Notes under the pieces: generated by a model
Database searches by the model: none
The model's input: only the letters and a program-made list of their open reading frames with translations
Told to the model about the DNA's origin: nothing
From: Haliotis rufescens
Taxonomy: Eukaryota
Reading direction: 5' to 3'
Length of the DNA stretch: 64,000 bases
Assembly (NCBI RefSeq): GCF_023055435.1
Contig: NW_025963990.1
Location: 3,410,001 to 3,474,000 of the forward strand
Made by a program: the position numbers and the translations under genes
In this document: positions 20,086 through 63,422 of the stretch, in pieces
Position numbering within the stretch: the first letter of the stretch is position 1
Layout: each line of letters begins with the position of its first letter

Positions 20086-20454
20086 CAAACTTCCACAGGA
20101 CGTACACATAGACGTCCAAAATAGTACATGTTCGTCAAGTAACGAAGAGTTTCGTATCATTTATGTAATAAATCAAATTATATGGTTATATGCATGATAT
20201 TATTCATTGATACACGTCTTTAACACCAGACAGCAAGACTCCAGCTAATTGACGGCAGCCTGTACATAATTGAGTTTGGACAAACGAGTGACAGAAAGAA
20301 TGAGCAACCGCCCACGCCCATCAGGACACGGTGACATGCAACTGACCAAGTCACCGAGCCTGACCAGTAGACCCATTTAGCTGACCATTACGACAAGCAT
20401 AAGCTACTGGGGACATATTCTGCACTAGAATCACCACGCGTGTGAACTCATAAA

Positions 20455-22913: not shown

Positions 22914-25088
22914 CTAATAGAAACTGGTATTGTCATTCCAAACAGGTTCCCAAGAAGGCCCGTTAGGTTCACCGTCGTCAAAGTCGTACTCCATCACACC
23001 AGACAACAACTTCGCCTCCTTTGTCGTAGCAACTTCCGGAAGACTGTCGCCGATCGGAGATTTAATTTCACGATGATTGAAAGGATCGCACTTGTCAAAA
23101 ATATTGATTCCTTGAGATGGCCAATGTGATGTCATCATCATATGTTTGTAAGCTATGAGTTTTGAGGGAACATCATCGGCCCGAGCCCACTTGGCCGGCG
23201 TCATGCACACGAACACCACAAAGCGCCATCTGTCGGAATTGGGGCGGCCTTTCTCCGGTCTGCAATTGTCATGCACTGTCCGAGAATCCCAAAGGACCAT
23301 CCCTCCTTTCGGAACAGGAACCTTTGTGGTAACGCAGCCCTTTCCTCGGAACCAAGATTTGTAGTCTTCATTTAAGTTATAATAATCGACTCTGTTGCCG
23401 TTCCTGGCGGAGTCTTCGAATTCTTCAAAGAAAGCGTTGAAATATTTATGCGATCCCGACAAAACCCTGAAGCAGAAGTCAGTTTCAGTCGCCTCCTCCA
23501 AATACAGAGCGCCTTGGTAACCATGGAGACCAATTCTTTTTGCCGGTTGGTCAACGTGTAACCATGCTTTCCCGGTATCATAAATTCCGAATTTTTCAGT
23601 TTCCGGTGGGAAAGATATGGCTACACCGTCAAAGCTTGTTAGGAGCTTCTCAGTCTCCCAGACTTTAGCAAAAACTGGTTTGGCTTTAAAGCGGCAGTTC
23701 CAGGTGTTTTCGAAATGACCAATATCATATCCCTGAACGACTGAGTGCAGGTGAGATGGCCCATCCTCCTTCTCGAACTGGGACAGCCAATCACGGTACT
23801 CGGATATGTACACGTCACAGTCCTGCGCACTGCAAACATCCGGTATCACGGCATACCCTTTCTCCTGAAGATCTTTCATAACTGAGTCTCTGGTGATGAA
23901 GACAAAAATGAAATGTGTTACTGTCAAGACCAAACAAATGCAAGAGTCATCAGCCGTATATAATGAGATATATGTAAATAATGTATTGCTCTTTCAAAAA
24001 AAATTCATTTGCGTTAGTCGGTCAGTCTTGTCCGGTTTGGTTGTCGCTATATCCCGGCCTATTTAATTACCAACATAACAAGGATTGACGTGAGCTGGGT
24101 GTTACTACAGGGCTTATTGTAACCCTACCCCTTCTTTCAGGGTAGAGACCGCCTCCGTGGTCAAGTGGTATAGCGTCCGCTCGGAGAGCGGAAGGTCCGG
24201 GGTTCGATCCCCGACCGCGTCATATCAAAAGACGTTAAAAGATGGTACTTGTTGTTACCCTGTCTGGCGCTCGGCATTAAGGGGCTAAAACAAGAACTGG
24301 TCGGCTCGGAGGCAGTATACTGTGTCTGAGTAGGGTATCCATGTTAAACTGCGGCATGGTATCTCAGTGTGCTAGCACTATAAATCGGCATCAGTCCGGA
24401 CTAATACAAGCAGCCACACACACACACACACACGACGCTATATAAGTGCAATAATCTTGGACGCGACGTTAAACCCCATTTCACCTCACCTCACCTTTCA
24501 GGGTAGAGAGCCTCAGTGTCTTTAGTGTCGACTAAAGTGGGAGACACGAGCATCCATCTCGTGACCTGGGTGGCTGGTTGTCATTGCTTGAGTCGTTGCT
24601 GCTAACTTCTCAATGTCGCAGTTTGTATATCGGATAAAGTTTTTTTAAATACACGAAGATAGCCTATCCAAAAGAATTATGACGCCGTGGCCTACTTTAG
24701 TTAGAGAAGTGTAGATTTATGCACCTCAAGTGACTTCGTCCTATTATTTTGAGCATATGTATTGTAGCTTGTTATCTCCCTTGGTCTGCAGACCATGTAA
24801 TCGTATCCTTCTGGGCATTGATATATGAAGATCAACAAGGATATAATAAGGATTAAATAACATGTTTAATAACCAAACCAACGCAGAACCAATCAGATCA
24901 CATACTAATGTGTTTTTCTCAATATTTCTTCAAACAATATTAGATAAAATGGCAGTGGTATATTATTTTTTATATACCGAAGAAGTTTATTCGGTATCAA
25001 AGGCCGCATGGCCAAGAGTTCAATACATGAGATTAACTTTAGCACATGGATAGGTGGGACACCTATTATACTGTCTCAATACAATATG

Positions 25089-25151
<63 letters not shown>

Positions 25152-35633: not shown

Positions 35634-38600
35634 TTATTCTGTAATAAAGGCCTCCAGCCCAGAGTACATGTGTATATAATCAAGTCACAACAATTTTAAG
35701 TTACAAACAAAAATTACAATCATTAAGAAGAGATCTACTATAATCATCAAGAGGAGGTGAAGCATTCGTAAACTGTATATAGAGTTGTCTCCCTTTAACC
35801 TATGAGATAAACCTGCCTTGCCTGCGTGCATTTAACAATATAAAGTGCTAAAGATTCTGACAAAGAATTATCTGTCATAACTTTCTCAAATTTGTCTAGA
35901 GTACGAAGATTACTAGTACAAATACTTGGCAAAAGCATATTTCTGAATTTGTTATACAAGTAACATGATGTAATAAAATGAACTTCATCCTCCACAATTG
36001 ATACACTCAGATTATCAAAACAATATTTACATACTCTATCCTCTCTAGCAACACCCAATTTCAACAGCCAGTTTGTGGTTACCACATCTGAATCGACTAA
36101 GAACAATTCTTAAATTTTTACTCTTCATATTGTGCAAATACCTTTCAGGCTCCAACACTGATTTGATAATAGAATAATTATAAAGCTTACTTGTTTCACT
36201 TATAGATAGTGCCCATGTTTGTTTCCAACAATCCTGCAACCTTTGCCTACAAATTCTAAGGAAATGGGTTATGTCACCAACACCCTGTTCAAACCAAACT
36301 AGACCAAATCCAAGTCTGTTCAACAGATATTTTATTCTAGTTGCCCATGTGGCTCTACCAGCCCCATCTAACTGATATAACATCAGATAGCAAGCCTTAG
36401 GATACCTATTTGTGGACATGTTTAATATTTTCAGCCAATACTTAATTGAATTGAACATGGTTGTTACATGTAATGGATACCGTCCTAGCTCCCCATACAA
36501 GACTGCTGCTGGAGTGTTTGAATTAACATGGAGAACTTTTCTAAGAAATTTGCAGTGCACATTTTCTATAACTTGGACACTTTCAAATCCCCAAACACAT
36601 GATGCATAACATAAGACTGGAGAAACCATCCTATCAAATAGAAACAAGGACTCTTTAATGTTAAGCTTAGACTTTTTCAAGAATCCAAACAAAATAAACA
36701 GAGCTTTTTCTCCTTGTTGTGCCAGGGTACTTCTTGCCAAACTCCATGAGAGCTTAGGGGTGAAAAACACCCCAAGATACTTATAAGCGGATACTGCTTC
36801 CAGAGGAATACCATCATAATGCCACTTTTCCTTTTTTGTTACTATACCACCTCTTCGGAATACCATGACTTTCGTTTTCTCAAAATTAACCCTCATCCCG
36901 TACTGATTGCAAAATCCTGCTAAACAATCTATCTGGTGCTGTTACCTTCTAACAGAATCTTCAACATTAGCAATATCATCTGCAAACATTATCAAAGTGA
37001 TGTTTTCAGCATACTCATTGACAAAAATACCCTTGCAATCATTAAACCTGTAATTATCTACTAGCTCATTCAAAAACAGGGTGAATAACAGTGGGCTTAT
37101 CATACACCCTTGCCTGGTTCCTATTGTACATTCAAAGAACTCAGACAGTGAGGACTTGTTAACTAGAACACATGATTTTAGCTGACTATACAGAGATGAA
37201 ATAACTGAAAAATTTACCTTTAACACCTTTTTGTAAAAGTACATATTTCAATAAATGGTGCTGGACGCTGTCGAATGCCTTCGAAAAGTCTATGAATAAA
37301 CAATAGCAGCGCCCTTTTGACTTGGAGAGGTATTTCTGAATAACCGATTGTAATACAAATATATTGTCTATGGTGCTATATCCATTTCTGTAGCCAGCTT
37401 GTTCCTCATACAGCTTTTCTTTTTCTTCACACCAGCCAACAAGTCTATTACTTAGTATTTTGGTAAAGGCCTTTCCAATTACTGATAACAAAGATATTCC
37501 CCTATAATTGTCAGGATCTGTTTTTTCACCTTTTTTATGAATAGGAAATTTTATTGCCTCTGTCCATTGTGATGGGTAAACTCCAACAGATAATATCTTG
37601 TTAAATAACCTGTGGATATATGATAAAAGTATATGAGATACACTTTTTAAATGTTCATTTAAAATTCCATCAGGTCCTGGCGCTTTGCCATTGGGGAGAT
37701 CATTAATTACAGATCTAATTTCCTCCATAGTAATAGTCTTATCTAAAACTTGTACACCCTCAACATTGTCACAACAGGCTGTGTCATCTTCATTATCCCT
37801 GATAAACTTATGTACATGTTCACAGAAGTCAGGGTCAGTATCAAAGTTACTGTTGTTGAGCAGTGATGAAAAATGATTATACCATTCCTCTGGTGAAATT
37901 GCTTCACTGCCAGACCTCCCTTGCCTGTTGTAGCGTTTGATGAATTTCCATAAGTCCCGTGTGGTCACACCCGCATTATTTATCACCCGCATTACATCTG
38001 GTTTATCTGCCATGTCATATCTGGCTTTTTTTTGTTTACATGCATTCTTAAATTTATTTCTTGATAAAATGTAATTCTTGAAGTTAATGTTAGAACCAGA
38101 TAATCTAAACTTGTCTAAACACTTATATTTTTCACCTTTGAGAATCTCACATTCATGGTCCCACCACTTGGGCTGACTAGGGTAGCGCCCCTCTGACCCC
38201 TTATTTGATTTCATACCACTTAAAATAGCACATTTACAAATAACTTCAGACAAGTTGCTTACTGCCGCATTAATGTCATTATCATCCAGATTCTTTACAA
38301 ATGTCATTTGCAGCTCGCTGTTGCATGTTTCATTTACAAGTTTGTCAACATATAGCTGGCTGAAGTTTGGTTTCCAATTTAGCTTATTCCATGACTTTAA
38401 CTGCTGGCCTGTCTTGTGTGGATTAACTTGAGGGATTAAATTAAGTCTACATGTCACTGGTAGGTGATCTGATTCTGGTATGGCAAGTATGTCAAAATCT
38501 GAAACACTTTTGTACAAACTTGTAGAAACCAAGACATAATCTATTACACTCTTTCCCGTATGTGAGATGAAAGTGAAATTACCACACCTATATCCTCCAG

Positions 38601-39835
38601 ATCTTCCATTTAGCATGTGTAGCCCCATCACTCGACATAGTGATAGTAGTGATCGTCCAAATAAATTCACAACATTATCCTTGGATATTCTTCTAATGTT
38701 AAAACAGTCAGTATCATATTCTGCATCCAGGTATGTGATGTCATCATCAATTATAAAATCTTGCTAAAGTCCCACCCTCGCATTCAAATCACCTATTACA
38801 GTAAACTGTATATTGTCACCATACTCAGATATGACAGTCATTAGTTGACTCCGGAGGCTCTCAATCCCATTTGTCTCATCTACAGTCCTGTAATACGTTG
38901 AACTTTCTGGAGGGATATAATTGAAACAAAATACTGTTTGCATGTCAAATGTACAAGTGGTCCAATCAAACAATAAGAATATTCCATTTGCATAATTTGA
39001 GCATATTCTCTGGAACAAATGGGCAATGTTTTTCCGGACATATACATATATTCCCCCAGCTACACGCCCTGAACCTGAGTACTTCCTTGCAGCTCCATAG
39101 TGAGAATATCCAGGTAATAAGTCTGAGAATTCAGTCTCTGATCTACTAAAAGTTTCATACAACCCAATAATGTCAAATTTCATAAACATATTCACAATAT
39201 CACTATTTACAAACTTTTTTAGCCCGCTAACATTCCATGAGAAAACATTCAGACTTCCAAAATCTAATTTACATGTACTCTGGCCTTGGCCGCACCCCTA
39301 TTCCTCCATCCACTGGGGTAAGGGTTTCCCATCCTTGGCACGTATTCCTGTTTCCATGTCGAATGTGTATATTCTGCCAGCCACCACGATTGTTTCATAC
39401 CTCATAAACATCTTTTCTGATTCGCCGATGTGGTAACGGGCTTTCTCGAGATATGGATAAAGTTTTTTGCGCTTGTCCCTTACCATTTCGCTGAAATCCT
39501 CTTTCAAGAAAACAGTTTGTTCACCTTCTTCACGCTTTTTCTTCCGAAACTGTCCAAGGGCATGTTGTTTGTGTTTAAACCTCATAAACTGAACACATAT
39601 TGGCCTTGGCTTACCATTACTATTCTTTTTCCCCAACCTACGCGTAGTTTCGATTGGGAATACATCATCGTTCATTGCATTCTCGATTCCAAGATCATGT
39701 TCTAGAAAGTTTCTTACTTTATCTTCTGTCTCTGTCCACAGTTCTTTCTCGCTTTCCTGGATTCCCATGATGATTACATTATTTCTTTTAAATGAATCTT
39801 CAAGTTTGCTAACCTTTTCACACGAGCACACGATT
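35634..39835 (-). mobile_element. Non-LTR retrotransposon (APE-RT with C-terminal CCHC; RTE-X-like, clade uncertain), 5'-truncated and inactivated
   Basis: ORF1 39298-~39830 (KLEDSFKRNNVIIMGI..RPICVQF, L1-ORF1/Transposase_22-like RRM). ORF2 pieces: SWNVSGL, DIIGLYET, GDLNARVG, SVIDY, SDHLPV (APE); KAPGPDGI, NYRGISLLS, FIDFSKAFDSV, RQGCMISPLLF, FADD (RT); CKYC..EDEVHF...C. Stops and frameshifts near 38764, 37200, 36942, 36050. Confidence 0.92.
37186..38670 (-). pseudogene. LINE ORF2 segment (endonuclease C-terminus to RT N-terminal half)
   Basis: 494-aa ORF with SVIDY, SDHLPV, KAPGPDG and FIDFSKAFDSV motifs. Confidence 0.85.
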
Positions 39836-39945: not shown

Positions 39946-42900
39946 CTAATAGAAGCTGGTATTCTCATTCCAAACAGGTTCCCAAGAAGGCCCGTTAGGT
40001 TCACCGTCGTCAAAGTCGTACTCCATCACACCAGATAGCAACTTCGCCTCCTTTGTCGTAGCAACTTCCGGAAGACTGTCGCCGATCGGAGATTTAATTT
40101 CACGATGATTGAAAGGATCGCACTTGTCAAAAATGTTGATTCCTTGAGATGGCCAGTGTGATGTCATCATCATATGTTTGTAAGCTCTGAGTTTTGAGGG
40201 AACATCATCGGCCCGAGCCCACTTGGCCGGCGTCATGCACACGAACACCACAAAGCGCCATCTGTCAGAATTGGGGCGGCCTTTCTCCGGTCTGCAGTTG
40301 TCATGCACTGTCCGAGAATCCCAAAGGACCATCCCTCCTTTCGGAACAGGAACCTTTGTGGTAACGCAGCCCTTTCCTCGGAACCAAGATTTGTCGTCTT
40401 CATTTAATCTATAATAATCGATTCTGTTGCCGTTCCTGGCGGAGTCTTCGAATTCTTCAAAGAAAGCGTTGAAATATTTATGCGATCCCGACAAAACCCT
40501 GAAGCAGAAGTCAGTTTCTGCCGCCTCCTCCAAATACAGAGCGCCTTGGTAACCATGGAGACCAATTTTTTCTGCCGGTTGGTCAACGTGTAACCATGCT
40601 TTCCCGGTATCATAAATTCCGAATTTTTCAGTTTCCGGTGGGAAAGATATGGCTACACCGTCAAAGCTTGTTAGGAGCTTCTCAGTCTCCCAGACTTTAG
40701 CAAAAACTGGTTTGGCTTTAAAGCGGCAGTTCCAGGTGTTTTCGAAATGACCAATATCATATCCCTGAACGACTGAGTGCATGTGAGATGGCCAATCATC
40801 CTCCTCGAACTGGGACAGCCAATCACGGTACTGGGATATGTACACGTCACAGTCCTGCGCACTGCAAACATCCGGTATCACGGCATACCCTTTCTCCTCA
40901 AGATCTTTCATAACTGAGTCTCTGGTGATGAAGACAAAAATAAATGTGTTACTGTCAAGACCAAACAAATGCAAGAGTCATCAACTGTATATAATGAGAT
41001 ATCTGTGAATAATGTATTGCTCTTTCAAAGTGGGCTCATTTGCGTTTGTCGGTCCATCTTCCCGAGGCAAGTGAGTTAACTGACTATAAAAGTCCAGTTT
41101 CCACCCTTGCCGAACTAGGCTGGAATTCCTGGGCACCAGTGGCTATTACTAGTTATCTCCTTTCTATGCCTCTCCTATTGACCAATCAGATTCAACCTCT
41201 CGTATCACTTGCATTTGCTTCAAACAAAACGGTGGCGCCCAGTCAAGACGATCTGATCGATAATCAAGATCTATATTGTGATAAAACGAGTCTTACATCG
41301 CGAAGTGCATCAAATCACGTGAGCACCTTGATTAAAAAGATTTAGAAAATATCTGTTGACAACGAGTTAGCGGTGCACATGCTTTGCAAGTCCTGCAGTC
41401 GATCGAAATCTGCATGACACTTTACGAACCGGATTTGGATTTCGGTGCGCGATTTTGATTGGACTATGCATAGACTCGTTAGTCCAGCCAAAATGTTACT
41501 CCATGATACCAGCCTAGTTCGGCAAGGGTGGAAACTGGACTTTCATAGTCAGGTAACTCACTTGCCTCGGGAAGATGTAGCCGGTCAGTCTTGTCCGGTT
41601 TGGATGTCGCTATATCCCGGCCTATTTAATTACCAACATAACAAGGATTGAGTTGAGATGAGTTAGTGACTACAAGGCTTATTGTGGTTACAAAAGCCTC
41701 AGTGTCTTTAGTGTCGACTAAACGTGGGAGACACGAGCATCCATCTCGTGACCTGGGTGGTTGGTTGTCATTGCTTAAGTCCTTGCTGCTAACTTCTCAA
41801 TGTCGCAGTATTTTATATCGGATGAAGTTGTTTTTTTAATGCACGAAGATAGCCTTTCTAAAGAATTATGACGCCGTGGCGTTACTTTAGTTAGATAAGT
41901 GTAGATTTATACACCTCAAGTGACTTCGTCCTATTATTTTGAGGGCCTTCTTTTCGTAGATCTTAGCAGGGACTTTCTATGGAATATCCCTCTATAGGGA
42001 TAATCTATACAAAGTCTCACTCTCCCAGGCATATTCAATACAAAAAAAGGGGGCACGGGTGGCCCAGTCGTCTAAGGCGCCGCGATTCGCTGTGCAGAGT
42101 TGCGTCCCTTGGGCACGCCAGAAACCTATGATTGTGGGTTCCAATCCCGGTTCGCCCCGATTATGTTTCTAGGTTTGTCAGCACCATACCCGTGCTCGTG
42201 GGTTTCACCGAAGTGATAAACGTCTGAGACCTGCATCACTTCGGGCTTTCCTCCCACATTAAGCTGACACGCCGTGCTATAACTGGAATACTGTTAAAAG
42301 CGGCGTTAAACACAACTCACTCACTCACTCACTCACTCAATACAAAAAAAACCTGTCCCAAAGATATTCCATACAAAGTCCCGCTGTCCCAAAGATATTC
42401 CATACAAAGTCCCCCTGCCCCAGGGATATTCCATACAAAGTCCCTCTGCCCCAGGGATATTCCATACAAAGTCCTCCTGCCCCAGGGATATTCCATACAA
42501 AGTCCCTCTGCCCCAGGGATATTCCATACAAAGTCCCCCTGCCCCAGGGATATTCCATACAAAGTTCCTCTGTCCCAGGGATATTCCATACAAAGTCCCT
42601 CTGCCCCAGGGATATTCCATACAAAGTCCCTCTGCCCCAGGGATATTCCATACAAAGTCCCCCTGCCCCAGGGATATTCCATACAAAGTTCCTCTGTCCC
42701 AGGGATATTCCATACAAAGTCCTCCTGCCCCAGGGATATTCCATACAAAGTTCCTCTGAAATATGTTTTTGGGACCCAACTCGATTTACTTTCATTTTAG
42801 ATACACCATTCACTTGAGAAAAGAAAAACTTAGATAAATTTTGTATTAATTTTGTAAATAATTGCATACGTTACCACCCTCATTCTTTAAACTTGTTATT

Positions 42901-47907: not shown

Positions 47908-49846
47908 CTATACAAATCCAAGACGAGTATTCTTCTTCCAAATAGGTTCCCAGGAAGGCCCGTTAGGTTCACCGTCGTCAAAGTCGTACTCCTCCACTCC
48001 AGACAACAACTTCGCCTCCTTTGTCGTAGCAACTTCCGGAAGACTGTCGCCGATCGGAGACTTGATTTTACTGTAATCAGAAGGATCAGACTTCTCAAAA
48101 ATGTTGATTCCTTGAGATGGCCAATGTCCTGTCATCATCATATGTGTGTAGGCCTTCTTCTTGTCAGGAACATCTTCCGGCCGAGCCCACTTGGCCGGCG
48201 TCATGCACACGAACACCACAAAGCGCCATCTGTCGGAATTGGGGCGGCCTTTCTCCGGTCTGCAGTTGTCATGCACTGTCCGAGAATCCCAAAGGACCAT
48301 CCCTCCTTTCGGAACAGGAACCTTTGTGATAACGCAGCCCTTTCCTCGGAACCAAGATTTGTCGTCTTTCGTTAATACATGGTACTTATTTTTGTTGCTC
48401 TTTTGTGCAGAGGCTTCAAATTCTTCAAAGAAAGCGTTGAAATGTTTATGCGATCCCGACAGGACCCTGAAGCAGTAGTCAGTTTCTGTCGCCTCCTCCA
48501 AATACAGAGCGCCTTGGTAACCATGGAGACCAATTCTTTCTGCCGGTTGGTCAAGATGAAGCCATTCTTTCCCGGTATCATAAACACCAGTTTCTTGGTT
48601 TTCCGGGGGATCAGATATGGCTACAGCGTCAAAGCTTGTTAGGAGCTTCTCAGTCTCCCAGACTTTAGCAAAAACTGGTTTGGCTTTAAAGCGGCAGTTC
48701 CAGGTGTTTTCGAAATGACCTACATCATAGCCTTGGATTATAGACTGGCTCTGGAACGGGAATTCGCCCTCTTTAAACTGAGATAGCCAATCACGGAACT
48801 GGGATATGTAGACGTCACTGTCCTGCGCACTGCAGACATCCGGTATCACGGCATACCCTTTCTCCTCCAGATCTCGCATAACTGCACCCCTGACGAGAGA
48901 GAAGCAAAACTTTTTATTAAAGAGACGATCTTGACCACATCACATACATTATAAATATATGTTAGTAAACGCTTCTACATTATCACAGGTAGGTCTCTCT
49001 CTCTCTCTTTCAATATTAATGTTGTATCATGCATAAAAGTCTTGATGAATTAACCTGACATAAATTTAGGTTGGTCGTTGGTCGTTCTGGGCGGGGAGGA
49101 CAGACGAGGTTGGTCGTTGGTCGTTCTGGGCGGGGAGGACAGACGAGGTTGGTCGTTGGTCGGTCGGGGGGGGGGGGGGGCAGACGAGGTTGGTCGTTGG
49201 TCGTTCTGGGCTGGGAGGACAGACGAGGTTGGTCGTTGGTCGGTCTGGGGGATAAGACAGGCGATGTTGGTCGTTGGTCGGTCGGGGGGGGAGGGGGGTG
49301 GGGGGGCAGACGAGGTTTGTCGTTGGTCGTTCTGGGCGGGGAGGACAGACGAGGTTGGTCGTTGGTCGGTCTGGGGGATAAGACAGGCGAGGTTGGTCGT
49401 TGGTCGGTCGGGGGGGTGGGGGTGGGGGGGGGGGGGGGTGGGGGACAGACGAGGTTGGTCGTTCTGGGGGGGGGGGAGGACAGACGAGGTTGGTCGTTGG
49501 TAGGTCTTTTGGGGAGGACAGACGAGGTTGGTCGTTGGTCGGTCTTTGGGGGGGGGGGGGCGTACAAACGAGGTTGGTCGGTCTGAGGGAGGACAGACGA
49601 GGTTGGTCGGTCTGGGGGGGGTCGGGAAATCTGAGTGGTAGGGGTCTGAAGAACGGAGGAATTGCGAGGATTCATGACATAAGCATTGACGATTAATACA
49701 TCGTGTGTGTTGAATATACACGCGGGATGTACCTGATAATTTGGTTGAAAATATTAATAAATATAATTTGGATTGTAGACGAGTCTATGTGTATCAATTT
49801 GAACGTACCTGTCAAAACACGCCCCTCCTTTCACATTAGTAGCCAT
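47908..49846 (-). CDS. PhyH-like Fe(II)/2OG dioxygenase, paralog 3
   Basis: Exon 1 49809-49846 (MATNVKGGACFDR), phase-2 intron, exon 2 47908-48889; WLHLDQ, WDSRTVH, RWRFVVFVCM. Confidence 0.9.
49068..49622. repeat. G-rich intronic minisatellite
   Basis: GACAGACGAGGTTGGTCGTTGGTCG units with poly-G tracts. Confidence 0.85.
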
Positions 49847-51170: not shown

Positions 51171-52374
51171 CGTTTATTTACAGGCTGTCAGGAAATAAAT
51201 GGAAAGTTGCGCGTTAAAACAACATTCACCTACTTATGACTTGAGTTTATGTCGTTTGCACGACTGGCTTCATGTGCCCGTTCAAAAACAGAAACACGAA
51301 ACGCATCGCACAACACGCATCCTTTGGCCCATATCCGCTTTCTATTTTTAACATGACGATGTTATTAGTCATGTATATTTATGGAGATAAACCCCCATCC
51401 CTAAACACATATCCTGTGGCAAAATACACGGATGCTGTTAAAATAATTTAACAAAATAATGCAGAAAAAAAACGTCAAAATAAGTGAAAACAATTTAAAC
51501 AGACTGTCTCAAATAAATAGCCAATCCATGCCATTTGGAGCATCCACTATTCCGATGAGAGGTATCGAACACATGTTGACAAACCTAAGACTAATATGCT
51601 AATTAATTTTGATTGAAAGTCAGCTTAAAATAAAAAGGATAAAAAACAACTGAGCCGAACATTTTAACAATTTGTTTGCAGCACTATCTGGGTTTGATAA
51701 AAAATGCTCCGAGTGCAATCTCTGGTACCATGGATATACGCATGCGTATTTTTGTCTACAAAATACTCACTCACTCACTCACTCACTCCCTCACTCACTC
51801 AATGCGCGAACCTACATGCTGTCTTTATAAAAGTCTCACTGAAACGGTGTATGACATATACTCTTCAAAAAAAGAAACGCAAAGCCAGATTTGTGTGAGG
51901 TAGGAAAACACATTTATACGAGGAACCGTACAAGGTATTGAGCCAAAATGTTGTGGAGAGAACACTTGGTGATTGTAGTCATCTCAGCTATCGGTACATA
52001 GGAAAAGTCCAAGGTGAAGGACAGCTACCATCAATAACGCGTATGTCCCCCGTTGGAATCGATAGCGGCCTGACATCTGCATAAGCAGTGTTCACAGAAG
52101 AAGTTATATAATATGTTATTTTACTTTCACAATGTTGGTTAGTGACACCATGGGTTTCAAAGATACTTTCTGATTTCTTACGGTTTTGGTTATGTATTGT
52201 GATGTAAGGGGGTTGAAACGAAATTACTTTACTGAAAGAGTTTCATCAGAGATCTCTGGATATGTTTTAAGACTAGATGTGGACAGTGTTGAAGCTCTAG
52301 TTGCGATGTACATGTATACGGATCTACAGAGTTCTATTCTACAAACCGGTACAATTTCTGGAACCCCATCGTGG

Positions 52375-52636
52375 TTGTTTGTGGTTTGTTGTTTTACGCC
52401 GCACTCAGCAATATTCCAGCTATATGACGGAGGTCTGTAAATAATCGAGGCTGGACCAGACAAGCCAGTGATTAATATCATGAGCATCGATCCACGTAAT
52501 TGGGATTGATGACGTGCATCAAGCAAGTCAGCGAGCCTGACCACCCGATCCCGTTAGTCGCCTCTTACGACAAGCATCGTCACCTTTTTCGGCAAGCATT
52601 GGTTCCTGAAGACCTATTCTACCCCGGATCTTCACC
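52375..52636 (-). mobile_element. Short retroposon family C
   Basis: Family match. Confidence 0.8.
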
Positions 52637-52975
52637 CCAAACGGCATAGAACCCAACATACTCACTCACCCAAAGAGTCAGTCCGTCATGAAATAACGAA
52701 AAACCGTTACAGATGTTTTGTATTCCCCGATCGGAATCCCTTTGTATAACACAGCTAAAGGTATAGTGTCCTTAGATGAATTATATATTTTATAATCACT
52801 TGTACATAGTGGTTCTAGATTACAAGCACTTGATATGAAAAGAAATGCTCCAAAATACCTTCCCCTTTTTTCGAAGACTATACCAAACTATTGTTACATC
52901 GAAACTGTCCTTATGATGTGGAAGTTATTTTTGATCGGTAGTGTTTGCGTCCGGTGTGCATCAGAGGCCGGTGCT

Positions 52976-55479
52976 CTACTTCCAGACAGGTTGCCAGGAA
53001 GGTCCGTTAGGTTCACCGTCGTCAAAGTCGTACTCCTCTACTCCAGACAACAGCAACGCCTCCTTTGTCGTGGCAACTTCCGGAAGACTTTCGCCAATAG
53101 GAGATATAATGTCGCTGAAATGTGGAGGATGAGAGGCTTCAAACATTTTGATTCCTTGTGACGGAAAATGGTCTGTCGTCATCATTTTCTTGTAAGCCTT
53201 TCGTCTGTCTGTCTTGTAATCCGGTTTAGCCCATTGCGCAGGCGCCATGGATACAAGAACCACAAAGCGCCACCTGTCGGAATTAGGACGGCCTTTAACT
53301 GGTCTGCAATTATCGTACACTGTTCGCGAATCCCAAACAACCATCCCTCCTTTGGGGACGGGAACCTTTTGGGCAACGCATCCTTTTTCTTTGAACCAAG
53401 CTTTTTCATCGTCGCCTAATTTATTAAATTGGTTTCTGGAGCTCTTCCTTGCATTGTCTTCAAATTCTTCATAGTAAGCCTCGAAATGTTTGTGTGACCC
53501 CGGCAGGACCCGGAAGCAATAGTCCGTTTCTGACGCCTCTTCCAAAAACATTGCTCCCTGGTAACCATGGAGACCAACTCTTTGTGGCGATTGGTCAGCA
53601 AGGAACCAATCTTTGCCGTAGTCATAAATACCGAATCTTTCAGTTTCAGGGGGAAATGAAATAGATACACCTTCGAAACTTGTGAGGAGCTTCTCGGTCT
53701 CCCAAATTTTAGCGTAAACTGGCTTTGCTTTTAATCGGCAATTCCAGGTATTTGCAAAATGTCCAATGTCATAACTCTGTATTACTGATTCAACTTGAAA
53801 CGGCCAATCATCTTCCTCAAACTGGGACAGCCAATCGCGGTACTGGGATATATACGTGTCACAGTCCTGCGCACTGCAAACGTCCGGTATCACAGCATAC
53901 CCTTTCGCCTCCAGGTCGTGCATAACTGATTCCCTGAAGATATATATAAGACATGGATTAGGAGCATCCGTTGATGTGAGGTGAGGTGAATGAGGGTTTA
54001 ACGTCGCGTCCAGGATTATTCCGCTTATATAGTGACGTGCATGCACTCAGTAATATTCCAGCTATATGACGGCGGTCTGTAAATAATCGAGTCTGGACCA
54101 GACATTCCATTTATTAATATCATGAGCATCGATCCGCGCAATTGGGATCGATGACATGCATCAACCGTTTGACTATGTGGGTAGAATTAATTAAACCTCT
54201 CTTAGTATGAGGATTCAGTAATAAATAATTCCTCATGATTTTGGAACAATTCCATCTCCTATCTCAAGGACCACAATCATTCTCATTCCGCGAAAACCCA
54301 CGCATCTTTTCCTATTTATGTCAGTGGGAAATTAGAAATGATTTCATTGCATTTGCTTAATTTTAAAACTTTCATTTTAATGTGAATAGAGTATCAATAT
54401 ATGCTACTCAAAAGAAGTTAAGGAACACCGGAATTGTTCAGATGACTACAGTTAAGCTGTCATGACATGTGTCATGTCATGTCATGTCATGTCATGACAG
54501 ATTACCTATAGTTATGACTAAATCGGGTGATCTTCAACTTCCTCTTAGTTCTGTTCTAGCCCCTGTGTGAAAAGTTTAGTCTATTTAATTCAAACTGGGG
54601 AAATCGTTTTGAAATAAGGATTGGAATGAGTTGAGTTTTTCAATTCGTGTTGCAATGGTCAGCGAAGTGGTTGGCTGTATCCATATATATTTAGTTATCA
54701 ACGCCCGGTAGACGTGCAAGCAGATACGTCCACGTCTAATTTGAGCTGAAGAACTTTGACATAGGGTCAGTAGTAGTTTATTCTAAAAGGTCATAGGCCC
54801 AGTTGCACATCGAGTACGGAGTGAGAAAGTATATTATAATGAAGACTGTCTCACAGACATACATACAGTAAACTACGCTTATAACGAACACGCTTATTAC
54901 GAACTGACAGATATAACGAACTTAATTTTAGTCCCGGCCATTTATTGTATATATGCTGTATTTATGCTTATAACGAACTACGGTTATTACAAACTAAAAT
55001 TAGTGGTCCTTTTGTGTTCGTTATAACCGTAGTTTACTGTACACATATAAGTTGGTTGCATTTGAAGAGAGCATAAGCATATTAAATTTGCAGATTGTTG
55101 GATATTCATAAATTTTTAAAAGAATGTACAAACGTCAAAATGCTTGATATGTATTACAACTGAGTAAGAAATGATATTCATCCATGTAGGACAGTTAAAA
55201 ATTATCACATAATCTTTCATTTCTGGCTTCTCCAATGCGGCATGGTATCTTAGTGAGCTAGCACTATAAATCGGCATCAGTCCGGACTAGTACAAGCAGC
55301 CACACACACACATACACGTGCATGCACGTCGCTATATAAGTGCAATAATCTTGGACGCGACGTTAAACCCAATTTCACCTCACCTCGTACAGTGTATGAG
55401 AACCATCTAATATGAGGTGAAGAAATTGTATATATGAGTACCTTAGTCGTGACAGAATCGGCTACTTGTGCGTAGGAGG

Positions 55480-55532
<53 letters not shown>

Positions 55533-56244
55533 ACAATGACAGAAGATTTTGATATTTTGGAACCCCTCCCTTTAAGTGAGTGAGTATGGTTTTAGCAATA
55601 TTCCAGCAATATCACGACGGGGTACATCAGAATTGGGCTTCACACATTGTACCCATGTCGGGAATCGAACCCGGGTCTTCGGCGTGACGAGCAAACGCTT
55701 TAACCGATAGGCTACCCGACCGCCCCCAAACTTGAAGAAAGAACTGTCTAGCAAGCATTATGCACATTATGAGGTCGTCATTTCTACCGTGGATGACAAT
55801 GTACACCAGCAGGAGGGAAGTATTCTATCCCACTAGGATCCAGGCACTCCAGCATCGTTGGCACATGTGTGTGAAACTCCCATGGGATTAAGCAACCAGC
55901 TCCACAAACACAGTCCATCACGGTTAGCCTCAACCCTTTCAGTCACCAATCGTAAACCTCAAAGCACCACTATACTGAACCGCAAAAGAAACGCAATTTC
56001 AATTTTAAAAAATGTGATGCATACCCCCCCTCCCCCCACATACACACCCCACCCCCCACACACTACACCCTACACCCCACCCCTCCCCTTCTTAAACATA
56101 TATACTACCTCAGTAAGCTGCGTCTATCCGAGCCAACCCACTCACTCACTCACTCGCTTTTTCACAGCCAGTGTCTGAAGCAATAGTGTAGACTACCAAC
56201 CTGTCGATACCGGTAAAGTCGTGCATCTCGCCCTCCGTCGCCAT
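52976..56244 (-). CDS. PhyH-like dioxygenase paralog 4, lacking both iron-binding His (candidate pseudoenzyme)
   Basis: Exon 1 56201-56244 (MATEGEMHDFTGIDR), phase-2 intron, exon 2 52976-53933; WFLADQ replaces WLHxDQ and WDSRTVY replaces WDSRTVH; ORF intact. Confidence 0.85.
54866..55039. mobile_element. MITE family M1
   Basis: CAGTAAAC/GTTTACTG TIRs, TA flanks. Confidence 0.8.
55237..55385 (+). mobile_element. SINE family D, 3' part
   Basis: Matches 24350-24494. Confidence 0.75.
55575..55727 (-). mobile_element. SINE family B
   Basis: Family match. Confidence 0.8.
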
Positions 56245-56659
56245 ATCAAATAGTTCAAGTGTCGTCTGCTCGTCGACAGATAATTGTTGGAAGTGACCTC
56301 TGCTGTCCACATCCGATGAAAAAGGCGCTCCTAGGCTTCTCCTTCGCGGCTTTTTACTGTCAGGACCATATTGCACAATTGGGTGAAATCTACCCACAAT
56401 GATATAAATAACATAGGTTGTACAACTTTATCTATAGACAGTGCCCAGTCTACTATTGAGTCGCAGCTCTCATGGAAACCCATTCAAAGCAGACGATCAA
56501 CAATTGGTTGTGTTCGGGCAAATGTTATTGTGGTTTATAAACCGCAACTTTCAGCAGTGAGGTTGATATTTTAAACGTAAGACAAATTCGTTGTCGCTAC
56601 TACTAAACAAAGCTCGGATTTAAATGAAATTGCATGTTCCATTAATACTGTGAGTGAAT

Positions 56660-56935
56660 GAATGAGTGAGTGAGTGAGGTTTCACGCCGCCTTGAATGGT
56701 GTACGTTATATCACGGCATGTCAGCTTGATGTGGGAGGAAAGCCCAAAGAGTTGCAGGTCTTAGATGTTTACCAATTCGGTGAAACCGAGCACGGGTATG
56801 GTGCTGACAAACCTAGGAACATAATCGGGGCGAACCTGATTCGAACCCAAAATCATAGGTTTCTGGCGTGTCCAAGGGACTCAACTCTGCACAGCGAATC
56901 GCGGCGCCTTAGACGACTGGGCCACCCTTGCCCCC
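56660..56935 (-). mobile_element. SINE family A upstream of paralog 4
   Basis: Family match. Confidence 0.8.
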
Positions 56936-59664: not shown

Positions 59665-61050
59665 GAACATTTTATATGTCTGTCGTTAATCTCTCATGAC
59701 ATGGCATATAACATGTGTCTGTCGTTAATCTGTCATGACATGTCATATAACATGTGACTACAGTTAATCTGCCATGAGATGTCATATGACATGTGTCTAT
59801 AGTTAATCTGTCATGACATGTCATATAACATGTGACTACAGTTGATCTCTCATGACATGTCATATAACATGTGACTACAGTTAATCTGCCATGACAAGTA
59901 ATATAACATATGTCTACAGTTAATCTCTCATGACATGTCATATAACATGTGTCTACAGTTAATCTCTCATGACATATCATATAACATGTGTCTACAGTTA
60001 ATCTGTCATGACAAGTAATATAACATATGTCTACAGTTAATCTGCCATGACATGTCATATAACATGTGTCTATAGTTAATCTGTCATGACATGTCATATT
60101 ACATGTGACTACAGTTGATCTCTCATGACATGTCATATAACATATGTCTATAGTTAATATGTCATGACATGTCATATAACATGTATCTATAGTTAATCTC
60201 TCATGGCACGACATATAACATGTGTCTACAGTTAATCTGTCATGACATGTCATATAACATGTGTCTATAGTTAATCTGTCATGACATGTCATATAACATG
60301 TGACTACAGTTGATCTCTCATGACATGTCATATAACATGTGACTACAGTTAATCTCTCATGACATGTCATATAACATGTGTCTACAGTTAATCTGCCATG
60401 AAAAGTTATATAACATATGTCTACAGTTCATCTCTCATGACATGGCATATAACATGTGTCTACAGTTAATCTCTCATGACATGTCATATAACATGTGTCT
60501 ACAGTTAATCTGTCACGACATGTCATATAACATGTGTCTAAAGTTAATATGCCATGACAAGTCATGTAACATATGTCTATAGTTAATCTGTCATGACATA
60601 TATCATATAACACTTCATATGTCTATCGTTAACCTGTCATGTCATGTCATGTCATATAACATGTGTCTACAGTAAATCTGTCATGTCATGTCATATAACA
60701 TGTGTCTACAGTTAATCTGTCATGGTCTGTCATATAACATGTGTCTACAGTAAATCTGTCATGTCATGTCATATAACATGTGTCTATAGTTAATCTGTCA
60801 TGTCATGTCATATAACATATGTCTATAGTTTATCTGTCTTGACATATGTCATATAACACTTCATAAGTCTATCGTTAACCTGTCATGTCATGTCATGTCA
60901 TATAACATGTGTCTGCAGTTAATCTCTCTTGACATATGTCATATAACACTTCATATGTCTACAATTAATCTGTCATATCATGGTCTGTCATATAACATGT
61001 GTCTATAGTTAATCTGTCATGACATGTCATATAACGTTTTATATGTCTAT
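59665..61050. repeat. ~39-bp minisatellite (CATGACATGTCATATAACATGTGTCTACAGTTAATCTGT)
   Basis: About 35 units containing the palindrome ATGACATGTCAT. Confidence 0.9.
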
Positions 61051-61276: not shown

Positions 61277-63422
61277 TCAGGTCATCTGGTGGTCCCATAC
61301 GGGCTCCCAGCCGGGGCCATTTGATTGGCCATCTTCAAAATCGTACTCCTCAACAGCAGCCAATCGGCGAGCAGTGAAGGTAGCGCCATCTTGTGGGATG
61401 GCGTCAACACAATTCATTGGGTCTCCATTGTGCTTCTTCTGCCTGCTCTTAAACAACATTGTGTCCTGAGACGGCCAGTGGTTGGTCATCTGAAGGTTAT
61501 TATAGGCACATGCACGTTTTTGTTTGTCTTCATCAGTTGCCCATTGAGCAGGCGTCATACACACGAACACCACCCAGCGCCACCTGTCGTCATTTGGACG
61601 CCCATGAACTGGTGGGACACTATCGTGGATAGTTCTTGAGTCCCAAAGCACAATTCCGCCTTTTGGGACTGAAATTTTGACAGCTTCGCACTTCCGTTTG
61701 TGATACCACTCAGATTGAGCTTTCGTGAGCTTGTAAAACTCGGACTTCAAGCTCTTTTTCCGAGCGCTGGCAAATTGGCTGAAAAACTCCTCGTGGTGTC
61801 GGTGCGAGTGTGACAGGACTCTAAGGCAGTGGTCCATATCTGTCACTTCTTCCAGATACAGCGCCCCCTGGTAGCAATGGAGACCTTTTCTAGACGGCTT
61901 CTGGTCGCAATGAAGCCAAGACGACCCCGTATCAAATTCTCCGTTTGTTTCCTCGGGGGGCTTTGATATGGCAACCCCATCAAAACTTGTTAGGAGCTTC
62001 TCCGTATCCCAGATCGAGGCGAACACCGGCTTGACCTTCAACCTCGCAGACCACGTGGCACCAAAGTGTCCAATCCGGTATTGGTGTAAAATTGATTTTC
62101 GTCTGTTTGGGAAGTCTCCATCTTGAAATGTCCCAAGCCATAATTTGTATCGTCCAATTAGCTCATCGCATTCCTTTCCAGTTAAAACGTCAGGAACGAC
62201 AGCGTAGCCCTTGGTTGCCAGTTCCCTTTTCGTCGCTTCGCTGAAATCAAACAGTATTTCAAAATTACACAAAGGCTAAAAAGTAAATGTTTCTTGGGAC
62301 TCGCGTCACTTTAAATCCTAAGGCATATTAAAAAATATTTGTTTCCCAAATTCCCCGCGTTATATGCAACAGATTATGTAATCCATAAAATGAACACAAA
62401 CGTGTGCGTTTGTATCCAAGTTCCGAGTTCAATGTCTGCCTAGTCGCAAACCATCCTTACCACCTTCTTTCACTTGGGAGATACGTTTTCCCGGGAAACA
62501 TTTATATTTTGGTATGCAGCCTAATTCAGGTCACGTATGGAATATACCTGCAACGTAATCTAATTATGCCTTAGGCCAGACTTTTTCAAATCTTGGTTTA
62601 CGAATTAGCCGACTCCCAAAAAATTGACTATGAAGCCAAAAAATGAAAATCAGTGAGGGAGGGTGGAGCCGGGGGTTATTCCGTCGATCAGAAATGAGTA
62701 AAATGTTTTTTAAAAAAACTCCTTTAGTCTCGCTATCAACATATATGATTTTTATTGAAATACAATTATTTTAACCTTTCCAAAAATTCATTTCAAGAAT
62801 TTATGAATATTTTGGGGAAATAATTATTTCTTTTAAATTTGACATTTTTTTAATAAAAATCCCCGACCAAAAGACCTAAATTTTGGGACCAAAAGTACGT
62901 AAGTTCCCTCCTCAGCTCTAGCAGCCTATACCCATCCCCTTCTCAGCTCTAGCAGCCTATACTCATCCTGTTTGGGTTTGTTTTGTTTTTGTTTTGTTTT
63001 TTGTTTTTTTGGGGGGGTGTCAGGGACTATGTTATATTTTATGTATGAGTACATGTGTCGTCTCAATACGACTGGATAATTGATTCCCGTGGAGCTTCCG
63101 GGTTGGAATTGGTCCTCAGCAATATGATATCAATCACTGGATTGTCAGGTCCAGACCGCCGTTATATAGTTGGAATATTGCTAAGTAATCGAATCATTTA
63201 CACGACGGAACCAATCTCGTGATCGCCAATCAATAAACATGATTCAATCTTGACACCTTTATCCAATACACGTATGAGCGCTCCCTCTCCCGACTACATT
63301 AATACTATTAGCAATACATGACCATACATGTTCTCATGTAAACACAACATTGTACATTGAGAAGTGTCAAACATAAGTCAAACACGTTTCTACCTGTCGA
63401 ATGAAAGCGCTGACTCGGCCAT
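61277..63422 (-). CDS. PhyH-like Fe(II)/2OG dioxygenase, paralog 5 (most divergent)
   Basis: Exon 1 63394-63422 (MAESALSFDS), phase-2 intron, exon 2 61277-62240; WLHCDQ, VPKGGIVLWDSRTIH, RWRWVVFVCM. Confidence 0.88.

What the first reader, a model, noticed from the sequence alone, without database searches (positions are those of the whole stretch)
52976..56244. Paralog 4 has lost both iron-binding histidines but stays intact: candidate pseudoenzyme within the cluster
Seen: the HxD His is Leu (CTT at 53600-53602, WFLADQ versus WLHVDQ) and the distal His is Tyr (TAC at 53315-53317, TVYDN versus TVHDN). The Asp, the 2OG-binding RWR, the splice sites, exon 1, the 5' motif and the C-terminal tail are all retained, with no stops or frameshifts despite clear nucleotide divergence. 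Inference: loss of exactly the two metal ligands in an otherwise conserved protein suggests selection for a non-catalytic role (substrate or 2OG binder, carrier, or heterodimer partner regulating the active paralogs) rather than decay.
Basis: partly seen in the sequence, partly recalled or inferred. Interest (0 to 1): 0.78.

Follow-up and report, generated by a model that had tools for sequence, protein, structure and literature searches.

The report
Conserved iron-site-dead dioxygenase paralog in abalone
One of five neighbouring dioxygenase genes in this abalone genome has lost both iron-holding histidines yet is still spliced, transcribed and kept intact in at least three abalone species, so it is most likely a retained non-catalytic "dead enzyme" rather than a decaying gene.

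Summary
Paralog 4 (minus strand, exon 1 56244-56201, intron 56200-53934, exon 2 53933-52976) has CTT/Leu and TAC/Tyr where 90/92 and 89/92 family members have the HxD His and the distal His. It is not an error. Contigs from four RNA-like runs, covering three studies and three organism labels, cover both codons unchanged, and three of them carry the GT..AG splice.

The public abalone proteins from H. rufescens (identical to the window's model), H. rubra and H. asinina all carry Leu and Tyr, are all 333 aa and have no indels. Since those species split, changes have avoided family-conserved columns (p=3e-4). No stop has arisen (P about 0.01-0.03 under neutrality). Coding sequence differs less than the UTRs.

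The loss is wider than the two ligands. The clade departs at 7 of 36 ultra-conserved columns, against 0-1 in the His-bearing clades. That pattern fits a dead catalytic site in a protein that is still maintained.

The non-catalytic role is inferred. A partner of the neighbouring active paralogs, as with TlxI/TlxJ, is the leading guess. This is a new member of a known kind.

The parts
56245..56376 (-). 5' UTR, minimum extent
   Evidence: Spliced contigs of X10, X11 and X19 reach 56362, 56319 and 56376 (table 8).
56201..56244 (-). Exon 1 coding part: ATG at 56244-56242, 14 codons, plus the first two bases (AG) of a split Arg codon
   Evidence: translation equals P0122 residues 1-14. The junction is seen in contigs.
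53934..56200 (-). Intron, 2267 nt, GT..AG, phase 2. It holds a tRNA-derived SINE-like element, a (GT)n run and other repeats
   Evidence: table 5 (skips 2267, CT..AC on + strand with cut +1) in X10, X11 and X19. Unique intron bins 54565-54715 and 55773-55923 have zero depth (table 2).
52976..53933 (-). Exon 2 coding part: PhyH-type double-stranded beta-helix domain and conserved C-terminal tail; stop TAG at 52978-52976
   Evidence: PF05721, 37.5 bits against cutoff 22; AF2 pLDDT 93.6.
53600..53602 (-). CTT = Leu111 (Leu126 of the full protein) in place of the HxD histidine
   Evidence: Unchanged in contigs of 4 of 4 runs. Leu also in P0001 and P0121.
53594..53596 (-). GAC = Asp113, the retained carboxylate of the HxD motif
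   Evidence: Invariant in 92/92.
53315..53317 (-). TAC = Tyr206 (Tyr221 of the full protein) in place of the distal histidine
   Evidence: Unchanged in contigs of 4 of 4 runs. Tyr also in P0001 and P0121.
53267..53275 (-). AGG TGG CGC = Arg220-Trp221-Arg222. Arg222 begins the strand after the Tyr206 strand and is taken to be the 2OG C5-carboxylate arginine
   Evidence: sequence; R222 in 92/92; strands 205-209 and 222-231. Its identity as the 2OG-binding Arg is inferred from fold topology.
53672..53674 (-). GAA = Glu87, where the Asp is 100% conserved in 82 background family sequences. Fixed in all three paralog-4 orthologs
53165..53167 (-). TTT = Phe256, where the Trp is 100% conserved in the background. 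Fixed in all three orthologs. The neighbouring His255 (53170-53168) is Asn in H. rubra and H. asinina
52548..52975 (-). 3' UTR, minimum extent
   Evidence: Contigs of X19 (52548-53033), X10 (52607-53033), X11 (52627-53033, in pieces) and X16 (52657-53033) (table 8).
47908..48879 (-). Context: paralog 3 catalytic exon, His-bearing (WLHLDQ, TVHDN)
39946..40974 (-). Context: paralog 2 catalytic exon, His-bearing
22914..23933 (-). Context: paralog 1 catalytic exon, His-bearing
61277..62272 (-). Context: paralog 5 catalytic exon, His-bearing (WLHCDQ, TIHDS), 47% identical to paralog 4

Best explanation
Paralog 4 is a transcribed, spliced, protein-coding member of a tandem cluster of PhyH-type Fe(II)/2-oxoglutarate dioxygenase genes in an abalone genome. 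Before the last common ancestor of H. rufescens, H. rubra and H. asinina, its lineage replaced both iron-binding histidines (His to Leu, His to Tyr) and two further family-invariant residues (Asp87 to Glu, Trp256 to Phe). With only the Asp of the 2-His-1-carboxylate triad left, it should not hold Fe(II) in the canonical way, so it should not activate O2 or turn over 2OG (inferred). The rest of the protein has nevertheless been kept by purifying selection: the beta-helix core, Arg222, the C-terminal tail, the reading frame and the gene structure. It is therefore a pseudoenzyme that works by binding, not by catalysis. My preferred mechanism, which is inferred and untested, is a non-catalytic auxiliary or regulatory subunit for the neighbouring active paralogs. 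The precedent is TlxI/TlxC in the same structural family. I put this at about 0.3 of the total. Next comes a binder or sequestrator of the family's unknown substrate, at about 0.25. Shown: the sequence state, expression, splicing, sharing across species, and signs of constraint. Inferred: lack of iron binding, lack of activity, and the partner role.
For: Sequence state. Rarity: first His present in 90/92 and distal His in 89/92; 0 of 108 wider representatives lack both; 1 of 11 loci in this genome. Fold: AF2 pLDDT 93.6 and pTM 0.92. Foldseek top hits are 2OG oxygenases of the PhyH type, best E 2e-10. VIA-align gives Z 19.8 to GIG2/DUF1479 and Z 16-17 to GriE, SnoN, ColD and TlxIJ. Leu111 lies in a beta bridge, Tyr206 in strand 205-209, and Arg222 starts strand 222-231. 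Expression: spliced contigs in 3 of 4 runs and exon-2 contigs in 4 of 4, with unique intron bins empty. No second genomic copy above 72% identity exists that could be a retrocopy. Conservation: P0122, P0001 and P0121 all carry L and Y, are 333 aa, and show 0 gap columns. The clade has 100/100 support. Constraint after the loss: 49 of 317 columns vary, and they avoid conserved columns (Mann-Whitney p=2.9e-4; 8/98 against 41/219). Amino-acid divergence rufescens-rubra is 0.149, against 0.075 (P1/2 clade) and 0.167 (P3 clade). Expected stops are 3.4-4.4 and observed 0, giving P=0.013-0.033. Coding against UTR differences are 10/971 vs 16/560 (p=0.012) and 5/911 vs 7/319 (p=0.017). Branch omega is 0.20-0.27. 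Dead-site signature: departures at 7 of 36 columns that are at least 98% conserved, against 0, 0 and 1 in the His-bearing clades, including losses after the species split (H255N, P315N, F73Y). Precedent: passages of the review PMC12141560.
Against: No biochemical data exist. With the better-fitting rooted topology, omega=1 on the paralog-4 branch is rejected only at p=0.028. Avoidance of conserved columns is weaker than in the His-bearing clades (8/98 against 2-6/98). The few coding differences between close organisms are not skewed to synonymous: against X19 there are 3 synonymous and 5 nonsynonymous nucleotide changes. The window's own allele carries two private nonsynonymous changes (Y239, M263), one of them at a column that is over 90% conserved. 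No H. cracherodii member is in the ortholog cluster. Tyr and Asp can ligate metals, so some metal binding is not excluded. Heterodimerisation was not testable.
Confidence: 0.7

Rival explanations
1. It is still an enzyme. The site has been rebuilt (Asp113, Tyr206, perhaps the new Glu87 or other residues) to bind a different metal or oxidation state, or the barrel now catalyses a metal-independent reaction.
For: Asp113 and Arg222 are invariant. Purifying selection persists. One of the four fixed changes at invariant columns, Asp87 to Glu, keeps a carboxylate. An unnamed relative, P0075, independently has His-x-Asp...Tyr. From recall, not from a call: the JmjC protein PHF2 has Tyr in place of the distal His and still binds metal.
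Against: Leu cannot ligate a metal, and no compensating His or Cys gain was seen in the paralog-4 columns I inspected by eye. Ultra-conserved residues continue to be lost after the species split (H255N and P315N in rubra and asinina; F73Y in rufescens). That is what a site no longer under selection looks like. 2OG normally binds by chelating the metal.
Confidence: 0.15
2. It is a slowly decaying, still transcribed gene under relaxed selection. It is an old but not yet disrupted pseudogene, and the apparent constraint is a residue of its history.
For: Constraint at conserved columns is weaker than in the paralogs. There are 7 of 36 ultra-conserved departures. Private nonsynonymous alleles occur in the reference. 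The rooted branch test is only p=0.028. No H. cracherodii entry is in the cluster.
Against: Three species keep 333-aa ORFs with 0 indels despite about 15% variable columns, giving P(no stop) of 0.013-0.033 without counting indels. Substitutions avoid conserved columns (p=2.9e-4). Its amino-acid rate is not above that of the His-bearing P3 clade. The CDS is 2.8-4 times less diverged than the UTRs. Canonical splicing is kept in two organism labels and exon-2 transcripts in three.
Confidence: 0.1
3. It is an artefact: an assembly or sequencing error at the two codons, or a mis-predicted gene model.
For: None found. The reference does differ from all four contig sets at two other codons.
Against: Both codons are unchanged in contigs from 4 of 4 runs, covering 3 studies and 3 organism labels. 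They are also present in independently assembled H. rubra and H. asinina proteins. The exon junction is seen directly.
Confidence: 0.01

Closest known systems
TlxI and TlxC, catalytically incompetent paralogs that heterodimerise with the active 2OG oxygenases TlxJ and TlxA in fungal talaromyolide biosynthesis (PDB 7VBQ; review PMC12141560, passages read)
   Same: They share the PhyH-type double-stranded beta-helix fold; 7vbq_B matches the paralog-4 model at Z 16.4. In both cases a dead paralog is encoded in the same gene cluster as active paralogs and is retained rather than lost.
   Different: TlxI lacks the 2OG-binding Arg and has a shortened lid loop, whereas paralog 4 keeps the Arg and lacks both metal-binding His. 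TlxI is fungal secondary metabolism and paralog 4 is from an animal. Heterodimerisation and activation are shown for TlxI/J and are untested here.
Catalytically intact members of the same lophotrochozoan PhyH (PF05721) family, such as paralogs 1-3 and 5 of this cluster and their Haliotis orthologs
   Same: 70-72% identity to paralogs 1-3. Same two-exon structure with a phase-2 intron after a short first exon, as seen in the public models P0002 and P0130. Same C-terminal EYDFDDGEPNGPSW tail.
   Different: H111L, H206Y, D87E, W256F, A90S and F226L are fixed. The stem branch is long, 0.27 against 0.06-0.09.
GIG2/DUF1479 and YbiU proteins (PDB 6akz, 4rgk), the closest solved folds
   Same: Best structural matches: Z 19.8 and 19.6, with 275 and 254 residues aligned. 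There is also a weak Pfam Gig2-like hit, E 0.04, below cutoff.
   Different: Only 10-14% identity. Those proteins are longer (416-451 aa). No sequence-level hit to any PDB chain. Their functions are also poorly defined.
Pseudo-oxygenases of the JmjC branch (JARID2; PHF2 and Epe1 with Tyr at the distal His position). These names and residues are recalled, not from a call
   Same: 2OG-oxygenase folds with degenerate metal triads that have non-catalytic or modified roles; His to Tyr at the distal position.
   Different: A different branch of the superfamily, nuclear chromatin proteins with extra domains. Paralog 4 is a single-domain protein and has lost the first His as well.

Membership tests
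PhyH family (Pfam PF05721), by homology | Score above the Pfam gathering cutoff | tested here: met
   37.5 bits against cutoff 22, E 3.9e-9, residues 8-205 on profile 2-199/213.
PhyH family (Pfam PF05721), by homology | Double-stranded beta-helix fold like solved PhyH-clan oxygenases | tested here: met
   AF2 pLDDT 93.6. Foldseek gives 316 PDB matches at E<=0.001, the top ones 2OG oxygenases. VIA-align Z is 16-20.
Catalytically competent Fe(II)/2OG oxygenase | His-x-Asp/Glu...His facial triad | tested here: not met
   Leu-x-Asp...Tyr. The same state is in P0001 and P0121.
Catalytically competent Fe(II)/2OG oxygenase | Basic residue for the 2OG C5 carboxylate at the start of the strand after the distal His | tested here: met
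   Arg222 is in 92/92 and begins strand 222-231. The assignment is by topology, not superposition.
Catalytically competent Fe(II)/2OG oxygenase | Fe(II)- and 2OG-dependent turnover | not testable with these tools
   Needs recombinant protein.
Pseudoenzyme | Homolog of an enzyme family that lacks essential catalytic residues | tested here: met
Pseudoenzyme | Expressed | tested here: met
   Spliced contigs in X10, X11 and X19, and an exon-2 contig in X16. This is RNA level only; the protein was not tested.
Pseudoenzyme | Maintained by selection after loss of the catalytic residues | tested here: met
   Three intact orthologs share the loss. Column avoidance gives p=2.9e-4. The no-stop test gives P 0.013-0.033. 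CDS differs less than UTR, p 0.012 and 0.017. Codon-level crown omega was not obtainable, so the strength of selection is not measured.
TlxI-type auxiliary subunit of a heterodimeric 2OG oxygenase | Encoded beside catalytic paralogs | tested here: met
   Four His-bearing paralogs lie within 31 kb on the same strand.
TlxI-type auxiliary subunit of a heterodimeric 2OG oxygenase | Physical heterodimer with, and activation of, a catalytic paralog | not testable with these tools
   Structure prediction takes single chains only; no interaction data.
Non-functional pseudogene | Stops, frameshifts or lost splice sites | tested here: not met
   The ORF is open. GT..AG is used. All three orthologs are 333 aa.
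Non-functional pseudogene | Neutral evolution (omega about 1) | tested here: inconclusive
   Omega on the paralog-4 branch is 0.20-0.27. Omega=1 is rejected at p=1e-16 (unrooted, or topology B) but only at p=0.028 under the better-fitting rooted topology A. The branch mixes time before and after the loss.

The most novel reading that the evidence does not exclude
The paralog-4 clade has not simply died. It has rebuilt the metal site from oxygen ligands (Asp113, Tyr206 and the newly acquired Glu87) to hold a different metal or Fe(III), creating a new kind of beta-helix enzyme or metal/ligand sensor in an animal.
Probability: 0.08. Interest if true: 0.8.

Novelty: new member of a known kind. Interest (0 to 1): 0.42.

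Why it matters
It gives a clean natural example in an animal of a 2OG-oxygenase paralog that lost its iron site and was then kept, probably for tens of millions of years, next to its active relatives. That makes two questions testable. What do dead oxygenase paralogs do: act as partner, sensor or decoy? And what does this uncharacterised, mollusc-expanded PhyH/DUF1479-like family do at all? A dead paralog that binds the same partner or substrate is a handle for pull-downs. In practice, annotation should not transfer 'dioxygenase' activity to LOC124144414 and its orthologs.

Tried and rejected
Sequence searches of PDB with the 5-sequence and 92-sequence profiles found no oxygenase. Because of that, and because model coordinates are not exposed, the ligand assignment rests on Pfam membership, invariance and fold topology.

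NCBIfam gave nothing.

I therefore had no DNA for the H. rubra or H. asinina orthologs and could not compute codon-level dN/dS for the crown. I substituted protein-level tests and the few nucleotide differences. Those differences are too few to estimate omega: against X19 there are 3 synonymous and 5 nonsynonymous changes.

My own branch-model likelihood code gave omega 0.20 with strong rejection of neutrality on an unrooted 4-taxon tree. Adding the saturated outgroup paralog 5 showed that the rejection depends on where the branch is cut: p=0.028 under the better topology. One search had a numerical failure for one model, and one search repeated it cleanly.

A bacterial promoter/terminator scan of the 3' region was irrelevant to a eukaryotic gene and told me nothing.

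Literature:
- 'phytanoyl-CoA dioxygenase' plus 'abalone' gave 0 papers.
- The wider mollusc query listed 15 of 15,190 papers, none of which held the enzyme term.
- The pseudoenzyme/2OG queries listed nothing about PhyH-type pseudoenzymes in animals. I saw only the listings of those papers.
- Divergence-time passages gave the Turbo-Haliotis split (about 111 Mya) and the oldest Haliotidae fossil (72.2 Mya), but no date for the rufescens/rubra/asinina node.
- Supplementary files were not opened, and tissue-expression tables there might bear on this gene.

Rejected readings: sequencing error, processed retrocopy as the source of the spliced contigs (one search shows no second copy above 72% identity), and young pseudogene.
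Full report
WHAT IS THERE. The window is part of an abalone (Haliotis) genome, G000:C212. It carries five PhyH-type (PF05721) genes, all on the minus strand. Paralog 4 has a short first exon (ATG at 56244, coding to 56201) and a 2267-nt GT..AG intron (56200-53934). Its large second exon (53933-52976, stop TAG) encodes the whole catalytic-type domain.

Searches with window sequence used exon 2 alone. The two exon pieces plus a split Arg codon are exactly the public protein P0122, 'uncharacterized protein LOC124144414 [Haliotis rufescens]'. The gene model therefore already exists in public annotation, but without a function.

THE OBSERVATION. Codon 53602-53600 is CTT (Leu111 in exon-2 numbering, Leu126 in the full protein). 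Codon 53317-53315 is TAC (Tyr206/221). Asp113 (GAC) and Arg220-Trp-Arg222 are kept. In the five-paralog alignment the others read WLH[VLC]DQ and T[VI]HD[NS].

How rare this state is:
- In a 92-sequence family alignment the first His is present in 90 of 92. The exceptions are paralog 4 and its H. rubra ortholog.
- The distal His is present in 89 of 92. The exceptions are those two and an unnamed protein, P0075.
- Asp113 and Arg222 are present in 92 of 92.
- Of 144 further representatives from a 1.84-billion-protein library, 108 cover the four motif columns. Of these, 104 are H-D-H-R and 4 deviate at one or two positions. None lacks both His, and 36 were partial.
- Of the 11 family loci in this genome, only this one lacks the histidines.

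ARE THESE THE METAL LIGANDS? The exon-2 product scores above the Pfam PhyH cutoff (37.5 bits against 22). It folds with high confidence (pLDDT 93.6, pTM 0.92). Foldseek's best PDB matches are PhyH-type 2OG oxygenases: proline hydroxylase H11, ColD, EvdO2, SnoK/SnoN, EctD and GriE, with E down to 2e-10. A VIA-align second look puts GIG2/DUF1479 and YbiU first (Z 19.8 and 19.6), and the same oxygenases at Z 16-17.

Leu111 sits in a beta bridge followed by a loop. Tyr206 is in strand 205-209, and Arg222 opens strand 222-231. From established knowledge of the fold, this is the usual placement of HxD, the distal His and the 2OG arginine. I could not make a residue-level superposition. PDB gave no sequence hit and model coordinates are not exposed. 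The assignment is therefore well supported but inferred.

NOT AN ERROR, AND EXPRESSED. I laid four small contig sets, labelled 'RNA?', on 52300-56800. In X10 and X11 (organism label A, two studies) and X19 (label C), one contig of 1030-1104 nt runs through exon 2, jumps from 53932/3 to 56200/1, and continues 120-177 nt upstream. In X16 (label B), a 926-nt contig covers exon 2 up to the junction.

Unique intron bins have zero depth. The deep intron bins coincide with the SINE-like, (GT)n and other repeats of the intron. The genome has no second copy above 72% identity that could be a retrocopy. These are therefore spliced transcripts.

No difference is listed at either critical codon in any of the four runs, and all four cover them. 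Contigs cannot give expression level or tissue.

SHARED ACROSS SPECIES. The 90% cluster of the best hit holds three proteins: H. rubra (P0001), H. asinina (P0121) and H. rufescens (P0122). All three have Leu and Tyr (..FLADQ, TVYDN) and the same exon-1-like N-terminus. All are 333 aa with no gap column. In a maximum-likelihood tree they form a 100/100 clade inside a 100/100 Haliotis-only group of 15 sequences. Each His-bearing paralog type has members from all three species. The double loss therefore predates the common ancestor of these three species.

I could not date that node. The passages I read give only the Turbo-Haliotis split (about 111 Mya) and the oldest Haliotidae fossil (72.2 Mya) (PMC13575190).

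SELECTION. Evidence for constraint after the loss:
(a) In the paralog-4 clade 49 of 317 columns vary, against 62/319, 34/319 and 93/315 in the three His-bearing clades. The variable columns are the less conserved ones in 82 background sequences: Mann-Whitney p=2.9e-4, with 8/98 highly conserved columns varying against 41/219 others, Fisher p=0.018.
(b) The rufescens-rubra amino-acid path is 0.149. It is 0.075 for the paralog-1/2 clade and 0.167 for the paralog-3 clade.
(c) Given at least 49-59 replacements, 3.4-4.4 nonsense changes would be expected under neutrality. None occurred, giving P=0.013-0.033 even with indels ignored.
(d) Against organism label C the coding part differs at 10/971 sites and the UTRs at 16/560 (p=0.012). 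Against label B the figures are 5/911 and 7/319 (p=0.017).

Evidence that is weaker or points the other way:
- Avoidance of conserved columns is less strict than in the active clades (2-6 of 98).
- The coding differences to label C are 3 synonymous and 5 nonsynonymous nucleotide changes.
- Pairwise dN/dS of paralog 4 against paralogs 1-3 is 0.18-0.20 at dS 0.88-0.96.
- My branch model gives omega 0.20 (background 0.43), with omega=1 rejected at 2dlnL=69 on the unrooted four-taxon tree.
- With paralog 5 as a saturated outgroup, the better-fitting topology gives omega 0.27 and rejects omega=1 only at p=0.028. The branch can be re-partitioned in that case.
- That branch also mixes time before and after the loss.
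- Codon data for the orthologs were out of reach.

SIGNATURE OF A DEAD SITE. Of 36 columns at least 98% conserved in the background, the paralog-4 clade departs at 7. Four departures are fixed: D87E, H111L, H206Y and W256F. Three arose after the species split: F73Y in rufescens, and H255N and P315N in rubra plus asinina. The three His-bearing clades depart at 0, 0 and 1. The clade keeps the consensus at 57 of 68 columns that are at least 90% conserved, against 64-66 for the others.

The stem branch is long, 0.27 against 0.06-0.09. A set of otherwise untouchable residues has been released from constraint while the bulk of the protein is still maintained.

MECHANISM. Shown: the state of the site, transcription and splicing, cross-species retention, and signs of constraint.

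Inferred: with Leu and Tyr replacing the two His, the canonical Fe(II) site is gone. With it goes 2OG chelation and O2 activation, so the protein acts by binding.

The nearest documented model is in the same fold family. TlxI (and TlxC) are catalytically incompetent paralogs in a gene cluster. They heterodimerise with TlxJ (TlxA) and raise kcat/Km from 0.02 to 1.63 per min per uM (passages of the review PMC12141560). The TlxIJ structure matches the model at Z 16.4. Paralog 4 differs in what it lost: the metal ligands rather than the arginine. I rank a partner or regulator of the neighbouring paralogs first and a substrate binder or decoy second. A rebuilt oxygen-ligand metal site is the outside possibility.

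COMPARISON AND NOVELTY. By homology and fold it is a member of the PhyH family. It fails the defining catalytic motif, so it should not be filed as an active dioxygenase. Pseudo-oxygenases are a known kind, so this is a new member, in an animal family whose function is itself unknown. I found no paper on it (listings only).

LIMITS. There is no protein-level, tissue, interaction or biochemical evidence, and no codon-level omega for the crown. No H. cracherodii member appears in the ortholog cluster, although that species has entries in two neighbouring clusters.

Noticed in passing
window 53216-53218 and 53144-53146 (minus-strand codons 239 and 263 of the exon-2 product): The assembly, and the public protein derived from it, has Tyr239 and Met263. 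Contigs from all four runs have Asp and Leu. Asp is the family consensus (over 90%) and is also in H. rubra and H. asinina. These are either private alleles of the reference individual or assembly errors.
   Followed up: partly
L007 (G000:C212:3341430-3342365, + strand): Another family member about 70 kb upstream of the window reads WFHVEQ, with Glu in place of the triad Asp (HxE instead of HxD). It keeps the distal His and RWR.
   Followed up: no
P0075 / P0135 (unnamed ENA proteins, 320 aa): An independent relative keeps His-x-Asp but has Tyr at the distal His position (TVYAS). It is the only other sequence of the 92 that lacks that His.
   Followed up: no
Public H. rubra models P0004, P0126, P0123 (isoforms X1-X3 of one gene, LOC124257096): Isoforms of a single annotated gene fall into two different paralog clades in the tree: paralog-3-like and paralog-1/2-like catalytic exons. 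This suggests either alternative use of tandem catalytic exons from a shared first exon or merged gene models. It echoes the scan's note that paralog 1 is chimeric.
   Followed up: no
window 22914-23933 vs 39946-40974 vs 47908-48879: Synonymous divergence is 0.037 between paralogs 1 and 2 and 0.30 between them and paralog 3, but 0.88-0.96 to paralog 4. Yet the protein tree puts each type in all three species. This points to recent duplication or gene conversion among paralogs 1-3 that paralog 4 has escaped.
   Followed up: partly
window 55640-55740 (inside the paralog-4 intron) and 53961-54260, 52300-52750: A tRNA-derived SINE-like element and other repeats draw summed contig depths of 10^4-10^5 in all four RNA-like runs. 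These repeat families are abundantly represented in transcript assemblies.
   Followed up: no
window 36045-38670 (minus strand): Two long ORFs (283 and 494 aa) that look, by eye, like reverse-transcriptase/endonuclease parts of a LINE-type retroelement lie between paralogs 1 and 2. No family search was run on them.
   Followed up: no
window 18971-20138, 32126-32650, 25020-25706, 49016-49721, 59672-60370: Long ORF-like tandem repeats lie between the paralogs. Examples are HEDTIRQEDMIR-type units, proline-rich PTNDQPRLSS-type units just upstream of the catalytic exons of paralogs 1 and 3, and MTCHERLTV-type units. They probably sit in introns or intergenic DNA.
   Followed up: no
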